64,000 bases of DNA, taken from IMG/VR virus record IMGVR_UViG_3300001460_000004, positions 124,001 to 188,000 of that record; one strand, 5' to 3'. The position numbers were made by a program, and so were the translations under genes. Under the pieces are notes generated by a model. The model saw nothing but the letters and a program-made list of their open reading frames with translations, did not search any database and was not told where the DNA came from. This document shows, in pieces, positions 4,123 to 35,803 of this stretch. The first letter of the stretch is position 1; every line of letters starts with the position of its first letter.

Positions 4123-4549
4123 CTTACAAACAGCACTAATTGAACTTGAATTTGAATTTGGTCGAGCTAATGATCGTTTTATAAACATAGTTATTAGTGA
4201 TGCTAAAAGTAAATTTAATGTTTTTCCTTATGAGGATAACGGATGGTTTGGCCATGTTGCTTTGCCAGTGCAGTTACCAACTAAGATTTTTATAGAGTGT
4301 AGTGGCAAAACTGATCAAGATGTAATAGTAGACAAAAATAATAATATAATACAAGACACATATGTAAAAATTAAAAACATAAAAATAGATGGATTTTTCT
4401 TATCTAAAAATTATATTGACCAAAAAATTATACAGCATACGTCAACTGGTGAAGAAATTATCAGTAGTTATATTGGACACAACTGCTCAATTGTTTTAGA
4501 CTTTTCAAAAAATAATGCAATTTATCAAGTTTTATACGCTAATCAGTAG
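4115..4549 (+). CDS. Hypothetical protein coupled to the B12 radical SAM gene
   Basis: 144-aa ORF overlapping the upstream stop. Confidence 0.65.
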   Translation: MLNLQTALIELEFEFGRANDRFINIVISDAKSKFNVFPYEDNGWFGHVALPVQLPTKIFIECSGKTDQDVIVDKNNNIIQDTYVKIKNIKIDGFFLSKNYIDQKIIQHTSTGEEIISSYIGHNCSIVLDFSKNNAIYQVLYANQ

Positions 4550-20050: not shown

Positions 20051-21613
20051 ATGAACAGTACAGATCTCAGTTTAATAAAAACAGCCCATAAAAAAACATC
20101 ATTTACACAAGAAGAAATTGATGATTTCCGAGCTAGTGCTGATCCAGTAACTGGCCCGGATTTTTTCTTGAGTAACTTTTTCTATATACAGCATCCCGTT
20201 CAGGGTAGAATAAAATATCAACCTTTTGACTATCAAAGAAGGTTGACAAATGTTTATCATAATTATAGATTTAGCATTAGTTTAATGCCAAGGCAAACTG
20301 GTAAAAGTACAACAGCTGCCGGATATTTGTTATGGTATGCTATGTTTATTCCTGATAGTACTATTCTTGTTGCTGCACACAAGTTTTTAGGCGCACAAGA
20401 AATTATGCAACGTGTGAGATATGCATACGAAAGTTGTCCTGATCATATACGTGCAGGGGTGGTAAGCTACAACAAAGGTAGTATTGAATTTGACAACGGC
20501 AGTCGTATTGTAAGCCAAACTACTACTGAGAATACCGGACGTGGTATGAGTATATCTTTAATGTATGCAGACGAGTTTGCATTTGTGCGTCCAACTATTG
20601 CTAAAGAGTTTTGGACTAGTATTAGTCCCACTCTAGCAACAGGTGGTAAAGCAATTATTACTAGTACGCCTAACAGTGATGAAGATCAATTTGCATTTTT
20701 ATGGAAAGGTGCAAACAAGTGTTTAGATGAACACGGCAATGCAACAGAAGTTGGACAAAACGGTTTTAAAGCATTTAGGAGTTTTTGGGATGAACATCCA
20801 GATCGTGATGACAAATGGGCACAAGAACAACGTGCTGCATTAGGAACTGATCGTTTTCGTCGAGAAATGGACTGTGAATTTATTATTAATGATGAAACAT
20901 TAATTGCTCCAACTACCCTAATTGATTTAGAAAGCGAAGACCCACTGTATAAAACTGGCGAAGTACGTTGGTATCGCAGACCAGAACCAAATAAAATTTA
21001 TGTTATCGGACTTGACCCTAGTCTAGGAACTGGTGGTGATCCTGCTGCTATACAAGTGTATGAAGCTAACAGTACTGTGCAAGTAGCTGAATGGTGCCAT
21101 AACAGAACTGATATACCTACCCAAATTCGGATACTTTCTGATATTATAACAGCAATAAATGTAATAGTTAAAAATCCTCAAAGTATATACTATAGCGTTG
21201 AAAACAACAGTATAGGAGAAGCCGCATTGATTAGTATTAATGAATACGGTGAAGAGAATATCCAAGGTTACTTTTTAAGCGAATCTGGATCTAAAAATGC
21301 AAGTCGTTTTAGAAAAGGATTTAACACTACTCATAAAGTAAAGTTAGCAGCTTGTAGTAAGTTTAAAAACTTAGTTGAAAGTAAAAAGATGCGTATCAAC
21401 AGTGCTGGACTTATAAGCGAACTTAAAAACTTTGTAGCATTAGGAACAAGTTATTCAGCAAAAACTGGAGAACATGATGATCTAGTTATGTCTACATTAT
21501 TAGTTGTTCGGATGTTACAAATATTACAAACTTATCACGTAGAATTAGACACACAAATGAGAGATCACAATGACCCATCGCAAGAACCTTTACCCTTTAT
21601 CATGTCAATGTAA
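20051..21613 (+). CDS. terL: Terminase large subunit (T4 gp17-like)
   Basis: PRQTGKST Walker A, YADEFAF Walker B, TSTPN, GLDPS, VENN, HDDLVM nuclease motifs. Confidence 0.95.
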   Translation: MNSTDLSLIKTAHKKTSFTQEEIDDFRASADPVTGPDFFLSNFFYIQHPVQGRIKYQPFDYQRRLTNVYHNYRFSISLMPRQTGKSTTAAGYLLWYAMFIPDSTILVAAHKFLGAQEIMQRVRYAYESCPDHIRAGVVSYNKGSIEFDNGSRIVSQTTTENTGRGMSISLMYADEFAFVRPTIAKEFWTSISPTLATGGKAIITSTPNSDEDQFAFLWKGANKCLDEHGNATEVGQNGFKAFRSFWDEHPDRDDKWAQEQRAALGTDRFRREMDCEFIINDETLIAPTTLIDLESEDPLYKTGEVRWYRRPEPNKIYVIGLDPSLGTGGDPAAIQVYEANSTVQVAEWCHNRTDIPTQIRILSDIITAINVIVKNPQSIYYSVENNSIGEAALISINEYGEENIQGYFLSESGSKNASRFRKGFNTTHKVKLAACSKFKNLVESKKMRINSAGLISELKNFVALGTSYSAKTGEHDDLVMSTLLVVRMLQILQTYHVELDTQMRDHNDPSQEPLPFIMSM

Positions 21614-21624
21614 TAAATAACATT

Positions 21625-22971
21625 ATGGATAACTCAAGTAACAATATGTTGTTTAACCTTTTGGTAACAAAAGGATTTGAACCAGAACTATTAGATATTA
21701 GTGGTAAACCTATCACTAATCCTACTGAAGCAGAAATGTTTAGCTTTGAATATCGCGGTGACGAAAAAAATTACGGCACAGTTGTTATTTTGCTAGGCAA
21801 AGAAGGAGACTTGCAGGTTTTCTTTGGAGACAATCTTGGCAAAACAATGGAACTTGGAGACAAGGACGAATGGTATGATTTTCTTGCACAGATTAAAAAA
21901 TTTGCCACTCGTAATTTGTTAAACTTTAAAGTTAACAACATTAACAAACTAAAGTATACCATGCAAGGAATAGCAGCAATTAATGAGGGTCTGTTTGAAG
22001 GTCAGTACTATGGCAAAAAAGATGTTAGCTACAATGGCCCTAAGGATGGTGCTAGATTAATGATCAAACACAAAAATCCAATTGGGGAAAATGGCAAACG
22101 ATATACTCAAGTTGATAAGTTATACGTAGAAAATTCAGAAGGCGAAAGATTTAAGCTACCTTTTAAAAATATTTTAGGTGGAAAAATAATGACTCGTCAT
22201 GTTAAAAATGGCGGAACTCCTTACGATGCATTAGGTACTCATATTAATGATATGATGGAAGAAATGAATGTGTTAGGAAAATTTATTAATGCTACACGTA
22301 ATAAAACATACGAAGATGCAGGAAATGCTATGGTGGAAACTGCTATCCAGCATTATAAAAAACTAAAGAGTAAAGCTAAAAAAATGGTCAGTGACAGAGG
22401 ATATGCCAGAGCCAAACATGACTTTGATCCCGGTAAAATACATGAGAGTGAAATTGCAACAGAGGTATTAAAGAGATATTTTGTTGAACAATCAATTGAT
22501 CAACGCATTGAAGAAGCACTACCGATGCTTGCACGTTTGGGCATAGCCTCAGCGGCAAATAACGTAGGAGAAGAAAAAATGAAAGAAGTAAATGAATTTA
22601 GTGAATGGGTTGAAGATGTAACCGAAGGGACTTGGGCTGTTCCAGAAACACGTGAAGAAATAAAAGCACTTGAACAACTACTAGCGGAACCATTAATTTT
22701 AGGACCAGATGCAACCAACGCAACCAACGCAATTTACGGATACATTGGTGATGATGAATTGTTTGATACACTATACGAGTTATCACTTGATAATCCTGAT
22801 GCAGATGCAAGACCTGCTATTATAGCTCGTTTAGAAAATATGGGAATTGACATTAACATAGATGATCGTCCAGTAACACCAAATGAAGATTTAGACACTG
22901 ATGGTGTTATGATGACTACCCCAAGTAATATGAGCAGCGAGTCTCTTAAACGTTTAGCTGGAATGCTATAA
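21625..22971 (+). CDS. Hypothetical late protein, probably virion/prohead-associated
   Basis: 448 aa; leaderless late promoter; ends LKRLAGML. Confidence 0.7.
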   Translation: MDNSSNNMLFNLLVTKGFEPELLDISGKPITNPTEAEMFSFEYRGDEKNYGTVVILLGKEGDLQVFFGDNLGKTMELGDKDEWYDFLAQIKKFATRNLLNFKVNNINKLKYTMQGIAAINEGLFEGQYYGKKDVSYNGPKDGARLMIKHKNPIGENGKRYTQVDKLYVENSEGERFKLPFKNILGGKIMTRHVKNGGTPYDALGTHINDMMEEMNVLGKFINATRNKTYEDAGNAMVETAIQHYKKLKSKAKKMVSDRGYARAKHDFDPGKIHESEIATEVLKRYFVEQSIDQRIEEALPMLARLGIASAANNVGEEKMKEVNEFSEWVEDVTEGTWAVPETREEIKALEQLLAEPLILGPDATNATNAIYGYIGDDELFDTLYELSLDNPDADARPAIIARLENMGIDINIDDRPVTPNEDLDTDGVMMTTPSNMSSESLKRLAGML

Positions 22972-23004
22972 AAACTCAAACGGTAAAACTTTTTAATAAA
23001 TAAC

Positions 23005-23033
23005 TTGACATTACACTGTGACCAATGTATATT
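23005..23033 (+). promoter_or_regulatory. sigma70-type promoter for the SSB gene (TAAATA just upstream)
   Basis: TTGACA-N17-TATATT. Confidence 0.65.
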
Positions 23034-23040
23034 AGTAATA

Positions 23041-23127
23041 TATACACAGTGAGTGTATAGGCAATCAAAGATACGTAGTTGCGTATCATAGGCAAATGAA
23101 AGAGTAGTAGTAGCTACTCGTAGGCAA
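23041..23127 (+). promoter_or_regulatory. Three tandem hairpin+TAGGCAA units in the SSB leader
   Basis: Stems TATACAC/GTGTATA, GATACG/CGTATC, GAGTAG/CTACTC; loops begin AGT; TAGGCAA at 23058, 23089, 23121. Confidence 0.75.
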
Positions 23128-23141
23128 AAAGGATAAACATT

Positions 23142-24116
23142 ATGGCTTCATTAGCAGAAATTCGTGCAAGACTTGCACAAGCAGAAAACAAGCAATCAGG
23201 TGGACGAGCTCCAGATTCTGATAGCGTAGTATACCCCCACTGGAACATGGATGAAGGAAAGTCAGCGTTAATGCGTTTCTTACCTGATGGCGATAGTAAT
23301 AACACGTTCTTTTGGGTAGAGCGGGCAATGATCAAACTTCCATTTAATGGCGTCAAGGGAAGCATGGACAATAAAATGACTATGGTTCATGTGCCTTGTG
23401 TTGAGATGTGGGGAGACAACTGTCCAATTCTTGCAGAAGTACGTGGTTGGTTTAAAGATCCAAGTCTTGAAGATATGGGTCGTAAGTATTGGAAAAAGCG
23501 TTCATATATTATGCAAGGCTTTGTACGTGAAAACCCAATTAGTGATGATCGTGCTCCAGAAAATCCCATTAGACGTTTCATTATGGGACCGCAAATCTTT
23601 ACTGTTATTAAGAGTGCGTTAATGGATCCTGAGCTTGAGGAAATTCCAACTGATACTATGCGTGGGTTAGACTTTCGTATTAGTAAAACCTCTAAAGGTG
23701 GTTATGCAGATTATAGCACCAGTAAATGGGCTCGTAAAGAAACTCCTTTAACAGCGGATGAACAAGCCGCAGTAGACACACATGGTTTGTTTACGTTAAA
23801 TGACTTTCTTCCAAAACGTCCTGACGATGCAGCTCTTCAAGTAATGAAAGAGATGTTTGAAGCAAGCGTAGATGGACAAAGCTATGATTTAGATCGTTGG
23901 GGATCGTACTTCCGTCCAGTGGGAATGGGTCCTGTGGCTAACACAGCACCTGCACCAACACCAGTAGCTGCACCAGTAGCTGCACCAGTAGCTGCACCAG
24001 TAACTGAAGCACCAGAAGTTAACCCAGTTACAACTCCTCCTCCAGAGGCACCTAAGAGCGATAAAGCAGAGGACATTCTTGCAATGATCCGTGCTAAACA
24101 ATCAGCAACACAGTAG
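23142..24116 (+). CDS. Single-stranded DNA-binding protein (T4 gp32-like)
   Basis: MRFLPD, C..MWG..CPI, YWKKRSY, GLDFRISKT..GGYADYSTS; Pro/Ala linker near the C-terminus. Confidence 0.9.
   Translation: MASLAEIRARLAQAENKQSGGRAPDSDSVVYPHWNMDEGKSALMRFLPDGDSNNTFFWVERAMIKLPFNGVKGSMDNKMTMVHVPCVEMWGDNCPILAEVRGWFKDPSLEDMGRKYWKKRSYIMQGFVRENPISDDRAPENPIRRFIMGPQIFTVIKSALMDPELEEIPTDTMRGLDFRISKTSKGGYADYSTSKWARKETPLTADEQAAVDTHGLFTLNDFLPKRPDDAALQVMKEMFEASVDGQSYDLDRWGSYFRPVGMGPVANTAPAPTPVAAPVAAPVAAPVTEAPEVNPVTTPPPEAPKSDKAEDILAMIRAKQSATQ
23959..24006 (+). repeat. 12-bp tandem repeat x4 (CACCAGTAGCTG) encoding a PVAA linker
   Basis: Three exact copies and one near copy. Confidence 0.9.
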
Positions 24117-24119
24117 CAC

Positions 24120-24770
24120 ATGCTAACTGAACTGGATTGGCTCTTATATCCAGAAGACTGTGAGGTGCTAATAACGCCTCACAGTCTATCACCATATCTA
24201 ATTGAAAAGAATGGCAGTACTGCACTTCGTTGGTATAGTGAACAAAACAACTGGAAAATTGCTAAAAATCATCAAATATATGATTTAGAAAACATAGATG
24301 TTTTTATACGCCCGCCAAAAGTTAGATATTTAAGTGGACTGTATACCTGGTTGCAATGGCTTAAACGTGATCATAATTTAGACTTAGCAACTGCTGAATG
24401 GTTTGCTAAAGAGTTTAGTTTTTTAAACAGGCACTATCTACCACAGTTCCATTGGTTACTTAACTTGGCACGTTATGTAAACCCTACATGTACTATAAAC
24501 TTTCATAAATTTGAAACGTTTTCTCAACACTTCCCTAATAATCATAACCCACATGGGTTTAAGTATGAAGCTGATTGGGGTCGTAACGTATTACAGCAAC
24601 AAAAAAAACTGGATTTTTGGTTTTATCTTGATGATATATTACGTGAACTTGATGGCAAAAGTTTTAATTGGTATGAATTTAGAAATTATTTTAAATCAAA
24701 CTACAGTGATACATATCACGTGTTAACAAGGACTAGTAGCTCAATTAGTAATGTATTGTCCACGACTTGA
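24120..24770 (+). CDS. Sulfotransferase-like protein
   Basis: IEKNGSTALR and FIRPPKVRYLSG resemble 5'-PSB and 3'-PB motifs; HYLPQ. Confidence 0.55.
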   Translation: MLTELDWLLYPEDCEVLITPHSLSPYLIEKNGSTALRWYSEQNNWKIAKNHQIYDLENIDVFIRPPKVRYLSGLYTWLQWLKRDHNLDLATAEWFAKEFSFLNRHYLPQFHWLLNLARYVNPTCTINFHKFETFSQHFPNNHNPHGFKYEADWGRNVLQQQKKLDFWFYLDDILRELDGKSFNWYEFRNYFKSNYSDTYHVLTRTSSSISNVLSTT

Positions 24771-25737
24771 TCATTTTGCAAGACTAAACAGCAATGGCAC
24801 TATTGGAAAATGTGGTCATATGACAATCCAACATGGATTTAAAAATGTTGAACAAATGCAAAATAGCAAATGGTTGGCTAGAGTAAGAGAAGATTTTTTA
24901 AATCAAACTTGGCCAAAAGAATGTATACGCTGTAGAGATACTGAAGCAGTAACACAACGTAGTATTAGACTTTCTAGTATTGAAAGAGATCGATTATTAT
25001 CAAAATTTGATTCTAACTATTTAATTGTTGGTGGTGTACTTGACAACATATGTAATAGTGCATGTCAAAGCTGTAGCAGTGATCTAAGCACAAAAATTGG
25101 TGCATTGGATGGCAGTAGGATTAAAGTTAATAATGAACATTTACTGGATGCACTACCTTGGGAAAACATCATTGAGTTAGATATAAATGGTGGCGAACCT
25201 ACAGCAAGTCCACGCTATCAAACGTTGCTTGAAAATCCACCGCCAAATGTAAAAATCATTAGGATTAATACTAATTGTAGTAGGCCAATGCGAGCCATTG
25301 AAAAATTACTACAACGACGAATTAAAGTAATTGTAACAGCAAGTTTAGATGGTATAGGCGCAATACACGATTATGTGCGTTGGCCAATTAAATGGAACAA
25401 CTATATAAAAGTTATTAACATATATAAACAATTACGTGATCAATATAGTAATTTAGAACTACAAGCATGGACTACAGTTAGCTCGTTAAACGCAATGGAT
25501 TTACCAAACATAATTAAATATTGTAATACAAACAACATTAATCATGACTGGAGTTTTTTAACATTCCCTTCTGCATTAGATGCTCGATATTATAATAGAC
25601 TAACAGCTAATGTGTCATTAGACACAGTTGCAACATTACAAGACAATACTACACAACTTGATGAGTTTATTACTAAACAAGATAAACTACGAAACATAGC
25701 AATGGAGGACTATTATGAAGATTGCTATCACCGGTGA
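24751..25737 (+). CDS. Radical SAM protein with N-terminal twitch/SPASM-like Cys cluster
   Basis: CNSACQSC, GGEP, SLDG..DYVRWP; N-terminal CP...GKC...ECIRC. Confidence 0.85.
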   Translation: MYCPRLDHFARLNSNGTIGKCGHMTIQHGFKNVEQMQNSKWLARVREDFLNQTWPKECIRCRDTEAVTQRSIRLSSIERDRLLSKFDSNYLIVGGVLDNICNSACQSCSSDLSTKIGALDGSRIKVNNEHLLDALPWENIIELDINGGEPTASPRYQTLLENPPPNVKIIRINTNCSRPMRAIEKLLQRRIKVIVTASLDGIGAIHDYVRWPIKWNNYIKVINIYKQLRDQYSNLELQAWTTVSSLNAMDLPNIIKYCNTNNINHDWSFLTFPSALDARYYNRLTANVSLDTVATLQDNTTQLDEFITKQDKLRNIAMEDYYEDCYHR

Positions 25738-26284
25738 TACTGCTGGGATTGGACTAGCATTAAGTGAAGAATTATCATATCGTGGACATGACATTGTTGG
25801 ATTAAGCAAGCGTAATGGTTATAACATTCGTATTACACCTAAAATAGTTGATTTGATTAAACAGTGTGATATGTTTGTTAACAATGCCCAAGTTGATTTT
25901 GCACAAACACAGTTACTATACGGAGTTTGGAAATGTTGGCAAGAATGCCCTGGTAATATAATTTGGAATATTAGTACAATGCTAACACAATGTCCAAGTA
26001 CTACTGATATAACAGATCTTGATCCAGTTGATATGAATATGTATCGCAATCAAAAACTTGCACTTGAGGATGCACACAACCAATTAAAATTTTTTGGGCA
26101 TGGGCCAAAGATGTGTTTGATTAAACCTGGTAATATACAGACACACTCAGGAAAAACAAATGCATGTAACACCACAGTGTGGGCAAAAACTGTTGTTGAC
26201 ACATATGTAACAGCACATGCACAAGGTATGCATCTTGAAGAAATAAGTATTGGATGGTTAAGCAATAAGGATAACCAAATTTAA
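25715..26284 (+). CDS. Short-chain dehydrogenase/reductase
   Basis: ITGDTAGIG, FVNNA, NIS, YRNQK (YxxxK), IKPG. Confidence 0.85.
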   Translation: MKIAITGDTAGIGLALSEELSYRGHDIVGLSKRNGYNIRITPKIVDLIKQCDMFVNNAQVDFAQTQLLYGVWKCWQECPGNIIWNISTMLTQCPSTTDITDLDPVDMNMYRNQKLALEDAHNQLKFFGHGPKMCLIKPGNIQTHSGKTNACNTTVWAKTVVDTYVTAHAQGMHLEEISIGWLSNKDNQI

Positions 26285-27429
26285 TGGATCCAAAAACTGC
26301 ACTTAAAAATGGTACATTCTGTCCATGTCCGTGGACTGGGTTTATTATGCAAGCTGATGGTAGTATTAAAAACTGTGTTGCATCCCAAGATGAAATTGGC
26401 AACATAAACAAAAATACAATACAAGAAGTGTTGGCTAGTGATCATAACCGAGAAATTAAGACAGCAATGTTAAATGGTATAAAGCACAGTAGTTGTGAAA
26501 CATGCCACATAAAAGAACAAAACAATCCATTGCGTACTAATATTATAAGCAATAGAATATATTATCTTAAAGAATTAGCTAGAGTTCCGTATGATCTTTA
26601 TACTGACGACGATGCGTTTGATCTAAACACAGTTGATCTTAGATGGAGAAACACTTGTAATTTTGCGTGTGTGTATTGTGATCCAATCAGCAGTAGTAAA
26701 TGGGCACAAGAACTCAATCAAAAGATACATATGCAAAATAGCAGTAGGCAAGATTTACTTGACTATGTGTTAGAAAATGCACACAAGTTAAAGAATATTT
26801 ACTTTGCTGGTGGCGAACCTTTAATGATCAAAGAAAATAAACAAGTACTCAAAAAACTTAAACAAGTAAACCCATTGCTAAACATTAGAGTGAACACAAA
26901 TCTAAGTAAAACCAATACTGGTATATTTGAACAGTTGTGTGAATTTAAAAATGTACATTGGATTATAAGTGTTGACTCAATGAGTACTGAATTTGAATAT
27001 ATACGCCATGGTGGTAATTGGGAACAATTTAAACAAAACTTCAAAATTATTACACAATTAGATCACAAAATTAGTTTTAACATGCTTTGGTTGATACTAA
27101 ATGCTCATAGTTTGTTTGATACTATTGATTGGTTAACTGACCAAGGCATGCACAACAATAGTATAGTACTTGGTCCTATTACTGGACCAAGTTATCTAGA
27201 CGTGAGAAATTTGCCAATTGAATTGCAACATTCTTTAGAAGATCGTATTATACAACGGCAAGACACCAACAGCACCTGGTTACTGGAACATGGATATCAA
27301 GTGCTTTTAGATCATTTAAGAAAACCATTTAATGGTAATTTAGAAAATAGTCAACACCGTCTAAGTGAGATGGACAAGCGTCGAAATATTAATCATAGGG
27401 ATATTTTTCCATGGCTATACAAACTGTAA
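26284..27429 (+). CDS. Radical SAM protein with N-terminal twitch/SPASM-like Cys cluster
   Basis: FCPCPW...KNC...CETC; CNFACVYC; AGGEP; SVD..FEYIR. Confidence 0.9.
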   Translation: MDPKTALKNGTFCPCPWTGFIMQADGSIKNCVASQDEIGNINKNTIQEVLASDHNREIKTAMLNGIKHSSCETCHIKEQNNPLRTNIISNRIYYLKELARVPYDLYTDDDAFDLNTVDLRWRNTCNFACVYCDPISSSKWAQELNQKIHMQNSSRQDLLDYVLENAHKLKNIYFAGGEPLMIKENKQVLKKLKQVNPLLNIRVNTNLSKTNTGIFEQLCEFKNVHWIISVDSMSTEFEYIRHGGNWEQFKQNFKIITQLDHKISFNMLWLILNAHSLFDTIDWLTDQGMHNNSIVLGPITGPSYLDVRNLPIELQHSLEDRIIQRQDTNSTWLLEHGYQVLLDHLRKPFNGNLENSQHRLSEMDKRRNINHRDIFPWLYKL

Positions 27430-34092: not shown

Positions 34093-35803
34093 TTAGCATT
34101 TCCCATGCAAATCCTGACAACATTTCTTGAGGTGTAAATTGACAATAACTCAAATGTGCTGCAAATTCAATAACATCTTGTTTTTGTGGAATATATAAAT
34201 CATTTAAATCAGATATTTTTGTGTTACACAATGCACTGGCAGAATTAGCAGCAAGAGCAATAGCTGGTACTCCATGTAACATTGCTTCTGTTGCAGCAAT
34301 ACTATTATATGTTATTAACACATATGCTTTATCTAATGCATCCCATATAGTGTCAGAACTAATACGCTCGGTTCTAGTAGGTTTATCTCTCATATTAATA
34401 GGACGATCGGTGAATTTTCTAATTTCCTTTACAGTATTATACATCCACTTGTCGGGATCCTCCCCGTAAAATTTCATTACTTTCCCACTGGGTGGACAAA
34501 TTAATATTTCATCACCTCGTTTTTTCTTTTCAGGAAAGTGATATCCTATCTTGTTTAACCTATCGTGCGGCCGCTTTCTTATTTCACTTAAATTTTGCAT
34601 ACCGTTTTTAGTAATACGGTGATACGTTTTATGTTTAAAATTACCAAGATACCCAGTATCTAAATAATAAAAAGTTCTTCCATTTGCTATACAGTCTTTG
34701 ATTGCTTCCTGGCACTTTCCACTGAGACCTCGGATCAATAACGGAGTAGTTGATTTCTTTTCTCGATTGTAACTTGATATTCTGCCATTAGAGCCTTTAA
34801 CAAAATTAACACATATAGGATCGTATTTTAATCCTCTTTCCTCATAAGGTGCATCGCTTTCAATTGAAACACATCTTATTGTTTTACTATCTGGGTGTCG
34901 CATTTGATCTAGCTCCTTGTTATCAAAATATCTATCTTTTGGGTCTATGAGTCTTTCAAAACTTTTTTTTAAATATGCTCGGGCTTCAAGACTAAAAGGT
35001 AAATGATCGATTGGCTCTTCTTTACCTTCCCAGTACGGTGCTTTTAATTTTTCTTGAGTGTCAAATAATTGTTGGTGCAAACACCTTCTCTCAACTTTAT
35101 AGTATTCATTGGCATATTCACAATCTTCATGTTCTTTAAACCATGGGCCGCCTTCTGTGTAATGCAACGCTTTGGGTGTGCCGTGAACACCTTCATGGTA
35201 CCAACCTACTAACCAATTCCATTCGTGTGAAAACTCTCCTAAGTATCTATCAGTAATCCAGCTAAATCGATGCAAATACTTCCCAGTCTGTTGATTTACT
35301 ACTTTTGCTGTAACAAACTTGTTCTTTACATGTCCACAATTGATTAGCATACAACTGCTCCAATTTTTACGTGGATACAAGTGTTGGGCTTGTCCGTCCA
35401 TTTTAGTAGACTCAGTTGGAGTGTAGTCATGATGGGCACACATTATTGCATATTTGTCATCACGCTCATTAAATAATTTCCTAACATCATCCAAGAAAAC
35501 AAAGTCGCAATCAACAAACAATGCCCAACCTTTAAAATTACACAACTCGGGTATTAAAAATCGGGTAAACGTAAATTCAGTACTGCTAAGTGTATCAATT
35601 TCTCGGGTATACAATCCTGCCCCACGTAGATTTTTCTGTTTAAGGGGTACAATTTTAACTGGACCAGTAGCATGATCAAGTATACTTTGCTTGCATACTC
35701 GATAGGCAATATCTTCGCGGCTATCCCAACCTACAAATACATGCAGGGTTTCTAATTCTTCGTTTATGTTATCACCATCCAAAGATATAATCCTTCCTAA
35801 CAT
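34079..35803 (-). CDS. Fusion: GT8-like GT-A glycosyltransferase + KpsS-like domain
   Basis: FVGWDSRE, STEFTFTRF, FVDCDF, YPRKNWSS, HYTEGGPW; C-terminal LDTGY...NSIAATEAMLHGVP. Confidence 0.75.
   Translation of the reverse strand: MLGRIISLDGDNINEELETLHVFVGWDSREDIAYRVCKQSILDHATGPVKIVPLKQKNLRGAGLYTREIDTLSSTEFTFTRFLIPELCNFKGWALFVDCDFVFLDDVRKLFNERDDKYAIMCAHHDYTPTESTKMDGQAQHLYPRKNWSSCMLINCGHVKNKFVTAKVVNQQTGKYLHRFSWITDRYLGEFSHEWNWLVGWYHEGVHGTPKALHYTEGGPWFKEHEDCEYANEYYKVERRCLHQQLFDTQEKLKAPYWEGKEEPIDHLPFSLEARAYLKKSFERLIDPKDRYFDNKELDQMRHPDSKTIRCVSIESDAPYEERGLKYDPICVNFVKGSNGRISSYNREKKSTTPLLIRGLSGKCQEAIKDCIANGRTFYYLDTGYLGNFKHKTYHRITKNGMQNLSEIRKRPHDRLNKIGYHFPEKKKRGDEILICPPSGKVMKFYGEDPDKWMYNTVKEIRKFTDRPINMRDKPTRTERISSDTIWDALDKAYVLITYNSIAATEAMLHGVPAIALAANSASALCNTKISDLNDLYIPQKQDVIEFAAHLSYCQFTPQEMLSGFAWEMLNESS

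What the first reader, a model, noticed from the sequence alone, without database searches (positions are those of the whole stretch)
23041..23141. Triple hairpin-TAGGCAA array in the SSB (gp32-like) leader
Seen: three units at 31-32 nt period. Each is a 6-7 bp stem of different sequence with a loop starting AGT (AGTGA, AGTT, AGTA), followed by invariant TAGGCAA (23058, 23089, 23121); the last unit abuts the SD. Different stems with constant loop and tail amount to internal covariation. Established: T4 gene 32 is translationally autoregulated through a leader pseudoknot plus unstructured repeats. Inference: a different, possibly undescribed cis-regulatory RNA (cooperative protein-binding array) or ssDNA hairpin signal.
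Basis: partly seen in the sequence, partly recalled or inferred. Interest (0 to 1): 0.75.

Follow-up and report, generated by a model that had tools for sequence, protein, structure and literature searches.

The report
Repeated AGGCA leader of phage SSB
The messenger RNA leader of this marine giant phage's single-strand DNA-binding protein carries three hairpins, each followed by the same short motif; the motif is conserved in dozens of related phages, so it is most likely a protein-binding switch that limits how much of the protein is made.

Summary
Three hairpins (7-bp stems, loops AGUGA, AGUU, AGUA) are each followed by TAGGCAA at 23058, 23089 and 23121. They lie between a near-consensus sigma70-type promoter and the Shine-Dalgarno site of a gp32-fold SSB gene (23142-24116). 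The cluster is unique in the 230-kb phage genome.

In uncultured aquatic relatives (IMG/VR), 66 of 71 distinct SSB leaders carry 2-4 sense-strand copies of A-[U/A/C]-AGGCA-[A/U]-[C]. That is 12 times the background density, with almost none antisense. The last copy sits next to the Shine-Dalgarno site or forms it. The rest of the leader has turned over.

Hairpins are not universal. The UAGUUG-loop hairpins seen here mark one subclade, and their stems covary. Metatranscriptome contigs cover the leader and the SSB gene but not the flanking genes. There is no Rfam match.

In one relative the same hairpin+AGGCA cassette also precedes a DnaE-type polymerase gene. In four others an AGGCA pair precedes a small gene of unknown function.

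Best reading (inferred, not shown): an mRNA operator that holds a repressor over the ribosome-binding site, most likely the SSB itself. This works like T4 gene 32 autoregulation but is built differently. I rate it a new variant of a known kind.

The parts
22995..23001 (+). ATAAATA, resembling a T4-type late promoter
   Evidence: ATAAATA occurs 34 times in the 100 nt upstream of genes in this genome against 2.8 expected. Function here is inferred.
23005..23033 (+). Sigma70-type promoter: TTGACA, 17 nt, TATATT. Predicted start about 23040.
   Evidence: 11 of 12 consensus matches and the best site in 21000-25000. It is one of about 20 such intergenic promoters in the genome.
23018..23046 (+). Second, weaker promoter-like site: GTGACC, 17 nt, TATACA. 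It aligns with the relatives' SSB promoter, and its -10 lies in the 5' arm of hairpin 1.
   Evidence: Alignment with L040 and L051. RNA-library contigs begin at 23059, compatible with a start at about 23053. Not decisive.
23041..23059 (+). Hairpin 1: 7-bp stem TATACAC/GTGTATA, loop AGTGA
   Evidence: Relatives keep a hairpin here with different stems.
23058..23064 (+). TAGGCAA copy 1
23070..23087 (+). Hairpin 2: GATACGT/GCGTATC, loop AGTT closed by T.G
   Evidence: The same loop occurs on other stems in relatives, and these stems covary.
23089..23095 (+). TAGGCAA copy 2
23102..23119 (+). Hairpin 3: GAGTAGT/GCTACTC, loop AGTA
   Evidence: L017, L109 and L117 carry the compensatory variant GATGAGT/GCTCATC.
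23121..23127 (+). TAGGCAA copy 3, one base before the SD
23129..23133 (+). Shine-Dalgarno AAGGA, 8 nt before the ATG at 23142
23142..24116 (+). SSB gene, 324 aa, gp32-type fold
   Evidence: phrog_1192, E 4e-57. Fold match to RB69 and T4 gp32 cores, prob 1.0.

Best explanation
The leader (about 23040-23141) is an mRNA-level translational operator of the SSB gene. The repeated single-stranded motif (U)AGGCA(A) is the recognition or nucleation site for an RNA-binding repressor, most likely the gp32-type SSB itself once ssDNA is saturated. In this subclade the hairpins keep the motifs single-stranded, fix their spacing and may add contacts through the conserved (U)AGU(U/A)(G) loops. Protein held at the copy next to the SD, and at neighbouring sites, blocks 30S binding. 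A hairpin close to the 5' end probably also stabilises the mRNA. Shown here: the anatomy, the conservation, the strand bias, the covariation and the transcription. Inferred: which protein binds, that the effect is repression, and cooperativity.
For: (1) The array is unique to the SSB leader in the genome. It lies between the promoter and the SD.

(2) AGGCA density across 74 related SSB leaders is 19.5 per kb in sense, against 0.45 per kb antisense and 1.6 per kb in flanking DNA. 66 of 71 distinct leaders have 2-4 copies. In 24 of them the last copy is the SD itself, at -12 to -14.

(3) In an alignment made without reference to the motif, the AGGCA(AC) blocks are the invariant columns and the surroundings vary.

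(4) Every member of a 68-row SSB clade has the motif, while leader architecture differs among its subclades.

(5) The leader stays with the SSB gene although the upstream and downstream neighbours differ between loci.

(6) Hairpins sharing the UAGUUG loop occur on at least six different stems. A pattern that left 5 stem pairs free gave 39 hits with 5 of 5 pairs, against 0-3 pairs for the chance hits. All 5 free pairs show changes on both sides.

(7) Marine metatranscriptome contigs cover 23059-24100 and leave the flanking genes almost bare; the only exact-match contig there is one at depth 2, 22761-22911.

(8) Precedent: T4 and RB69 gp32 repress their own mRNAs through a 5' structure plus short repeats that reach the RBS, and the targets diverge between phages (PMC535899; PMC3014915).

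(9) The protein has the gp32 fold.

(10) More distant relatives have other short direct repeats at the same place, for example four CACAATTTAG-like repeats in Atu_ph07.
Against: - There are no binding or expression data, and the host is uncultured.
- gp32 binding is classically sequence-independent, so a 5-7-nt specific motif would be unusual for it.
- In relatives the same motif also sits in the leaders of other genes. These are a DnaE-type polymerase on the same contig as L122 and a small gene of unknown function in four genomes. That fits a separate regulator with a small regulon equally well.
- The genome held is only 66% complete, so a regulator gene could be missing from view.
- Each unit resembles an RBS without a start codon (AGG core followed by AAAGA or AAGGA). 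The array could therefore boost translation rather than repress it.
Confidence: 0.45

Rival explanations
1. The array is an operator for a different, dedicated RNA-binding regulator (RegA-like in logic) that controls a small replication regulon. The SSB mRNA is its main target, not its own repressor.
For: The same cassette precedes a DnaE-type Pol III alpha gene 30 kb from the SSB gene on one 316-kb contig. AGGCA pairs that end as the SD precede a conserved gene for a 111-124-aa protein of unknown function in four other large relatives. That size is like RegA (122 aa; PMC3014915), and its own leader carries the motif, as expected for an autoregulated repressor.
Against: No Translat_reg (PF01818), CsrA or CSD hit in the held part of the genome. 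The small protein has no homologue in this genome and no structural match to any RNA-binding fold. In two relatives its gene has no AGGCA leader. No other gene in this genome shows the motif above chance. The genome is 66% complete, so absence is weak evidence.
Confidence: 0.2
2. No repressor is involved. The leader is a constitutive expression module. A hairpin at or near the 5' end protects the mRNA from 5'-end-dependent decay, and the AGG-containing repeats act as extra ribosome landing (standby) sites for a very highly expressed gene.
For: Each unit looks like an RBS without a start codon: AGG core followed by AAAGA, AAAGA and AAGGA. In many relatives the last copy is the SD. SSB RNA stands out above its neighbours in metatranscriptomes. 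T4 gene 32 mRNA is exceptionally stable (PMC3014915). The cassette appears portable.
Against: Pairing with the anti-SD explains only AGG. It does not explain the invariant CA, the preferred A/C after it, or the complete absence of G before it in 171 copies. The real SD and AUG are already unpaired in the predicted fold, so a standby site is not needed. AGGCA is not preferred as an SD elsewhere in the genome.
Confidence: 0.2
3. The repeats are DNA-level sites: a transcription-factor operator downstream of the promoter, iterons, or an ssDNA signal.
For: Direct repeats close to a promoter. The spacing in this window (31 and 32 bp) is about three helical turns.
Against: In relatives the spacings run from 10 to 93 bp with no 10.5-bp phasing; 37 of 115 are in phase, about the chance level (my count). 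The motif has one orientation only, 173 sense against 4 antisense. It is often fused to the SD, which is an RNA signal. Hairpin stems covary, which points to a folded single strand.
Confidence: 0.08

Closest known systems
T4/T2/RB69 gene 32 translational operator (autogenous repression by gp32)
   Same: It lies in the 5' leader of a gp32-fold SSB gene. A structured element near the 5' end is followed by short direct repeats that run into the RBS. The target sequence diverges between phage lineages (PMC535899, PMC3014915).
   Different: No pseudoknot is evident. The repeats are (U)AGGCA(A), not UUAAA/UAAA. In this window the region between 5' end and RBS is structured (three stable hairpins) rather than an unstructured A+U tract of more than 40 nt. 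Binding by the SSB is untested.
T4/RB69 gene 43 operator (DNA polymerase autoregulation)
   Same: A hairpin with a conserved loop on a variable stem lies a few tens of nt upstream of the AUG, together with sequence overlapping the RBS. In one relative the cassette does precede a polymerase gene (L199).
   Different: The loop sequence differs (AGUU or AGUA, not UAAC). The hairpins are repeated. The gene here is the SSB, and the polymerase in the relative is DnaE-type, not family B.
T4 RegA regulon
   Same: A short single-stranded motif at or next to the RBS, which in relatives occurs on more than one replication-related mRNA.
   Different: RegA sites are A+U-rich, single and overlap the AUG on about 30 mRNAs. 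No regA homologue was found, and in this genome the motif occurs at one gene only.
Candidate structured RNAs upstream of GP32 genes in IMG/VR (Fremin et al. 2023, PMC10690425)
   Same: The same data source (IMG/VR) and the same position (directly upstream of gp32-type genes). Twelve covariation-supported candidates are reported, some marine.
   Different: That survey scores structure, whereas the most conserved feature here is an unpaired repeat.
PeSL promoter-stem-loop cassettes of T4-type phages (from memory: Arbiol, Comeau and Krisch 2010)
   Same: An early promoter is joined to a stem-loop, and the cassette appears to have been copied in front of another gene (L122 and L199).
   Different: PeSLs are described as recombination and shuffling modules flanking variable genes. 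They have no repeated AGGCA motif or link to the SD. I did not check this against the paper.

Membership tests
T4-type gene 32 translational operator | Lies in the 5' leader of a gp32-type SSB gene and extends to the RBS | tested here: met
T4-type gene 32 translational operator | 5' H-type pseudoknot that nucleates binding | tested here: not met
   The fold gives three simple hairpins. By inspection, none of the loops AGUGA, AGUU or AGUA has a downstream complement of 4 nt or more. Pseudoknot software was not run.
T4-type gene 32 translational operator | Unstructured A+U-rich tract of more than 40 nt with UUAAA/UAAA repeats covering the RBS | tested here: not met
   The window has structured spacers and UAGGCAA repeats. 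Some relatives do have fully unstructured 20-29-nt AU-rich spacers between AGGCA copies.
T4-type gene 32 translational operator | Autogenous repression by the SSB | not testable with these tools
   Needs binding and translation assays.
T4 gene 43-type hairpin operator | Hairpin with a conserved loop on a variable stem upstream of the RBS | tested here: met
   The loop gUAGUUGc occurs on six or more stems, and all 5 free pairs covary. This is a resemblance in form only.
T4 gene 43-type hairpin operator | Bound by the polymerase encoded downstream | tested here: not met
   The downstream gene is the SSB. Only relative L199 has a polymerase there.
RegA regulon operator | A regA (PF01818) gene is present and many mRNAs carry the site at the AUG | tested here: not met
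   No PF01818 hit (the genome is 66% complete). AGGCA is not enriched upstream of other genes.
CsrA/Rsm-binding leader | GGA motifs presented in hairpin loops, with a CsrA-family protein available | tested here: not met
   The motif is AGGCA and lies outside the hairpins. The loops are AGUN. There is no phage CsrA. A host CsrA cannot be examined.
Any Rfam 15 family | Covariance-model match at or near the gathering score | tested here: not met
   The best hit is sau-66 at 21.8 bits against a gathering score of 80.
csRNAs upstream of GP32 (PMC10690425) | Match to one of the 12 published models | not testable with these tools
   No supplementary files are held.
DNA iterons / duplex operator | Helical phasing of the repeats and independence from transcript orientation | tested here: not met
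   No 10.5-bp phasing. Sense to antisense ratio is 173 to 4.

The most novel reading that the evidence does not exclude
A gp32-type SSB, or a still unknown partner, reads a sequence-specific RNA code: unpaired (U)AGGCA(A/C) repeats, plus UAGUUG-loop hairpins in one subclade. This code forms a portable leader cassette in a large clade of uncultured aquatic jumbo phages. The cassette places the SSB, and in some phages a DnaE-type polymerase and a small gene of unknown function, under one post-transcriptional control. It would be a second, structurally unrelated solution to gene 32-type autoregulation.
Probability: 0.3. Interest if true: 0.7.

Novelty: new variant of a known kind. Interest (0 to 1): 0.55.

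Why it matters
How gp32-type SSBs pick out their own mRNA is still unresolved. The T4 literature itself asks for study of autocontrol in diverse relatives (PMC3014915). This clade offers a simple, sequence-defined candidate operator with dozens of natural variants in copy number, spacing, presence of hairpins and fusion to the SD. That makes the question testable with purified protein and short RNAs. The clade is abundant in aquatic viromes (at least 600 IMG/VR hits) and its SSB transcripts are visible in marine metatranscriptomes, so the element probably governs a highly expressed gene in common uncultured marine phages. The motif is also a practical marker for annotating SSB gene starts and leader cassettes in such contigs.

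Tried and rejected
- Megablast of 3 kb against GenBank phages found nothing. The nearest named relatives share only 45-56% protein identity, and their SSB leaders lack AGGCA.
- Rfam, permissive search: no credible hit.
- A regulon in the window's own genome: AGGCA clusters and AGGCA upstream of starts compared with permuted 5-mers both showed nothing beyond the SSB leader.
- Long-range pairing of the motif with the SSB ORF: no conserved TGCCT. Only 29 of 81 ORFs have it anywhere, at scattered positions.
- The neighbouring 216-aa gene as regulator: it is absent next to most motif-bearing SSB genes.
- The small 115-aa protein of relatives as regulator: no Pfam or PHROG hit, no fold match, and not in this genome. 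It remains an open lead.
- RegA, CsrA and CSD searches of the genome were negative.
- Terminators: no plus-strand terminator-like site in the leader, and no hairpin is followed by a U-run. The minus-strand 'terminator-like' hits at 23087 and 23119 are the same hairpins read backwards, and no gene converges on them.
- The TAGGCAA preceded by an imperfect hairpin at 35703 lies antisense inside a 574-aa ORF and is taken as chance.
- PDB sequence search of the SSB found nothing; the fold search was needed.
It was rerun without that row.
- Mapping the transcription start from contigs is inconclusive. Exact contigs begin at 23059 and 23107. One contig from a relative runs about 39 nt further upstream.

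Full report
**What is there.** The window is bases 124001-188000 of a 230,036-bp, 36% G+C virus record that CheckV rates 66% complete. DNA runs that hold this sequence are marine and brine metagenomes. The finding lies in the 170-nt gap between a 448-aa virion-protein-like gene, which ends at 22971, and a 324-aa gene at 23142-24116. That gene is an SSB: phrog_1192 at E 4e-57. It has no Pfam or PDB sequence hit. Its AlphaFold model (pLDDT 70) matches the gp32 cores of RB69 and T4, with prob 1.0 and TM 0.67-0.69 normalised to the target. 'gp32-like' is therefore correct at the level of fold.

**Layout of the gap.**
- ATAAATA at 22995-23001. This word is 12-fold enriched upstream of genes in this genome and resembles the T4 late promoter.
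- A near-consensus sigma70-type promoter, TTGACA-17-TATATT, at 23005-23033.
- AAGGA at 23129-23133 and the ATG at 23142.
- Most other sigma70-type promoters listed lie only tens of nt from an ATG, so a leader of about 100 nt is long for this genome (my reading).

**Is it more than chance?** Yes.
- The 7-mer is not enriched overall, but this is the only place in the genome where copies cluster.
- No other copy follows a hairpin.
- Only these three of 79 AGT-loop hairpins genome-wide abut AGGCA.

**Relatives.**
- Named phages share only 45-56% SSB identity: PA5oct, Phosso, Atu_ph07, RaK2, 121Q, XbC2 and a Vibrio jumbo phage.
- IMG/VR holds at least 600 closer relatives. I took the best 80, at 60-75% identity.
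- Nearly every one of their SSB leaders carries the core AGGCA in the sense strand. Density is 19.5 per kb in the last 120 nt before the start, against 1.6 per kb in the flanks and 0.45 per kb antisense.
- 171 copies give the consensus A-[T>A,C; never G]-AGGCA-[A>T]-[C>A].
- 66 of 71 distinct leaders have 2-4 copies. The last copy lies at -12 to -37, and in 24 leaders it is the SD itself (gaaAGGCAAc).
- An alignment of 21 leaders of another architecture, made without reference to the motif, has the AGGCA(AC) blocks as its invariant columns.
- On an SSB tree, every member of a 68-row clade has the motif. The cultured jumbo phages and most of a small sister clade lack it. The window falls in a well-supported 7-row subclade (98/88).
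- The leader travels with the SSB gene while the flanking genes differ between loci.

**The hairpins.** They are real but lineage-specific.
- A pattern fixing only the loop-proximal GTAGTTGC and TAGGCA, with five stem pairs left free, returned 125 matches in IMG/VR. Of these, 39 have all five pairs complementary, one has four, and the rest have 0-3, as expected by chance.
- Stems include GATAC/GTATC, GAGTA/TACTC, GATGA/TCATC, GATGC/GCATC, GGTGT/ACACC and longer ones.
- All five free pairs show changes on both sides. That table was built from rows already chosen for pairing, so one search is the unbiased evidence.
- These loop-conserved hairpins occur only in the window's subclade.
- Elsewhere, 25 of 45 long spacers between AGGCA copies hold a different hairpin that ends 0-2 nt before the next motif. 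The other 20 are A+U-rich and predicted to be wholly unstructured. That second class resembles the unstructured part of the T4 operator.
- Hairpin 1 aligns with a hairpin in the relatives whose 5' arm contains the -10 of their SSB promoter. In several lineages this hairpin is followed by a T-run (my reading), so it may also terminate upstream transcription.
- In the window a second, stronger promoter lies 13 nt further upstream. Hairpin 1 may therefore be fully, partly or not transcribed, depending on the start used.

**RNA evidence.**
- In four marine metatranscriptome runs, contigs cover 23010-24100. They are essentially absent from the genes on both sides; the only exact-match contig there is one at depth 2 over 22761-22911.
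- Exact-match contigs span 23059-23325 and 23107-23287. Contigs of L040-like relatives cover the hairpin 2 and hairpin 3 region.
- DNA contamination would not single out one gene, so the leader is transcribed with the SSB gene.
- The contigs do not fix the 5' end.

**Level of action.** Five observations argue for RNA and against duplex DNA:
- one orientation only;
- position downstream of the promoter;
- frequent fusion with the SD;
- covarying stems;
- spacings of 10-93 nt with no helical phasing, 37 of 115 in phase.

No hairpin has a U-run after it, so none is an attenuator. No conserved complement of the motif exists in the SSB ORFs.

**Who reads it?** Within this genome the array is unique to the SSB gene and no regulon signal exists. 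Together with the gp32 precedent (PMC535899; PMC3014915), this favours autogenous control. Two observations in relatives complicate that view.
- On a 316-kb contig, an identical 40-nt hairpin+TAGGCA segment followed by CAGGCAA at -12 also precedes a DnaE-type Pol III alpha gene, 30 kb from the SSB gene.
- In four other large genomes, a promoter followed by two AGGCAA(C) copies, the second serving as the SD, precedes a conserved gene for a 111-124-aa protein of unknown function.
- That protein has no family or fold match. It is absent from the held part of this genome. In two relatives its gene lacks the motif.

So the motif behaves as a portable operator. No RegA, CsrA or cold-shock-domain gene was found.

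A non-repressive reading (stability plus ribosome recruitment) is not excluded. Pairing with the anti-SD would explain only AGG, however, not the invariant CA, the preferred following A/C, or the absence of a preceding G.

**Comparison with known systems.**
- It works like the T4 gene 32 operator in position and logic, but fails two of that family's structural criteria: the pseudoknot and the UUAAA tract.
- In form it resembles the gene 43 hairpin operator.
- It is not in Rfam.
- A 2023 IMG/VR survey reports 12 candidate structured RNAs upstream of GP32 genes (PMC10690425). Its models were not available to me, so I cannot say whether this subclade's hairpins are among them. The unpaired AGGCA repeat is unlikely to have been scored by a structure-based screen.
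- More distant relatives carry other short direct repeats at the same position. This suggests that lineage-specific repeats in the SSB leader are a general theme.

**Verdict.** I rate it a new variant of a known kind of control element. The mechanism is inferred at moderate confidence (0.45 for SSB autoregulation; about 0.65 for a protein-binding translational operator of some kind).

Noticed in passing
L199:2697-4391 (-) with its leader at about 4392-4470; L122 lies on the same contig, IMGVR_UViG_3300021197_001489: One related 316-kb phage carries an identical 40-nt hairpin+TAGGCA segment in front of both its SSB gene and a DnaE-type Pol III alpha gene (PF07733, PF17657). This looks like a copied regulatory cassette.
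   Followed up: partly
L210:1525-1869, L211:1523-1867, L216:1524-1895, L208:1161-1493 (-): A conserved 111-124-aa protein of unknown function (no Pfam, PHROG or PDB fold match) has its own sigma70-type promoter. Its leader carries two AGGCAA(C) copies, the second serving as the SD. It is a candidate regulon member or regulator. It is absent from the held 66% of this genome.
   Followed up: partly
window 22995-23001 and genome-wide: The genome combines about 20 near-consensus sigma70-type intergenic promoters with a T4-late-like ATAAATA word that is 12-fold enriched upstream of genes. The SSB gene has both.
   Followed up: partly
window 24751-27429: Directly downstream of the SSB gene and a 216-aa ORF of unknown function lie two radical-SAM-type genes, one with a SPASM domain, with a short ORF carrying a Rossmann-like N-terminus between them. 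This is an unusual neighbourhood for a replication gene.
   Followed up: no
L085:330-400 (Atu_ph07), L083 (Vibrio phage 2.275.O), L081 (PA5oct): Distant relatives lack AGGCA but have other short direct repeats in the SSB leader: four CACAATT(T)A(G)-like repeats in Atu_ph07, ACGGTACA twice and CTACTTAAA twice in the Vibrio phage, and AGGATAA twice after a hairpin in PA5oct.
   Followed up: no
L233 and L230, around position 1500 (G005:195378, G004:189418): A conserved stretch that lies in no long ORF contains AGGCAATTGCTAACTTAAGGCAA in two related genomes. It could be a small RNA or another leader.
   Followed up: no
L027, L030, L055, L057, L065, L079 (SSB leaders): The sister clade without AGGCA repeats has a hairpin with different stems that presents AUAGG in its loop (in L027/L030, L065 and L079; unclear in L055/L057). 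This may be a variant way of displaying the same UAGG core.
   Followed up: no
window 23010-24100 against its flanks: In four marine metatranscriptome runs, contigs from this phage and its relatives pile up on the SSB gene, while the terminase-side and downstream genes are nearly bare. This suggests a very abundant or very stable SSB mRNA.
   Followed up: partly
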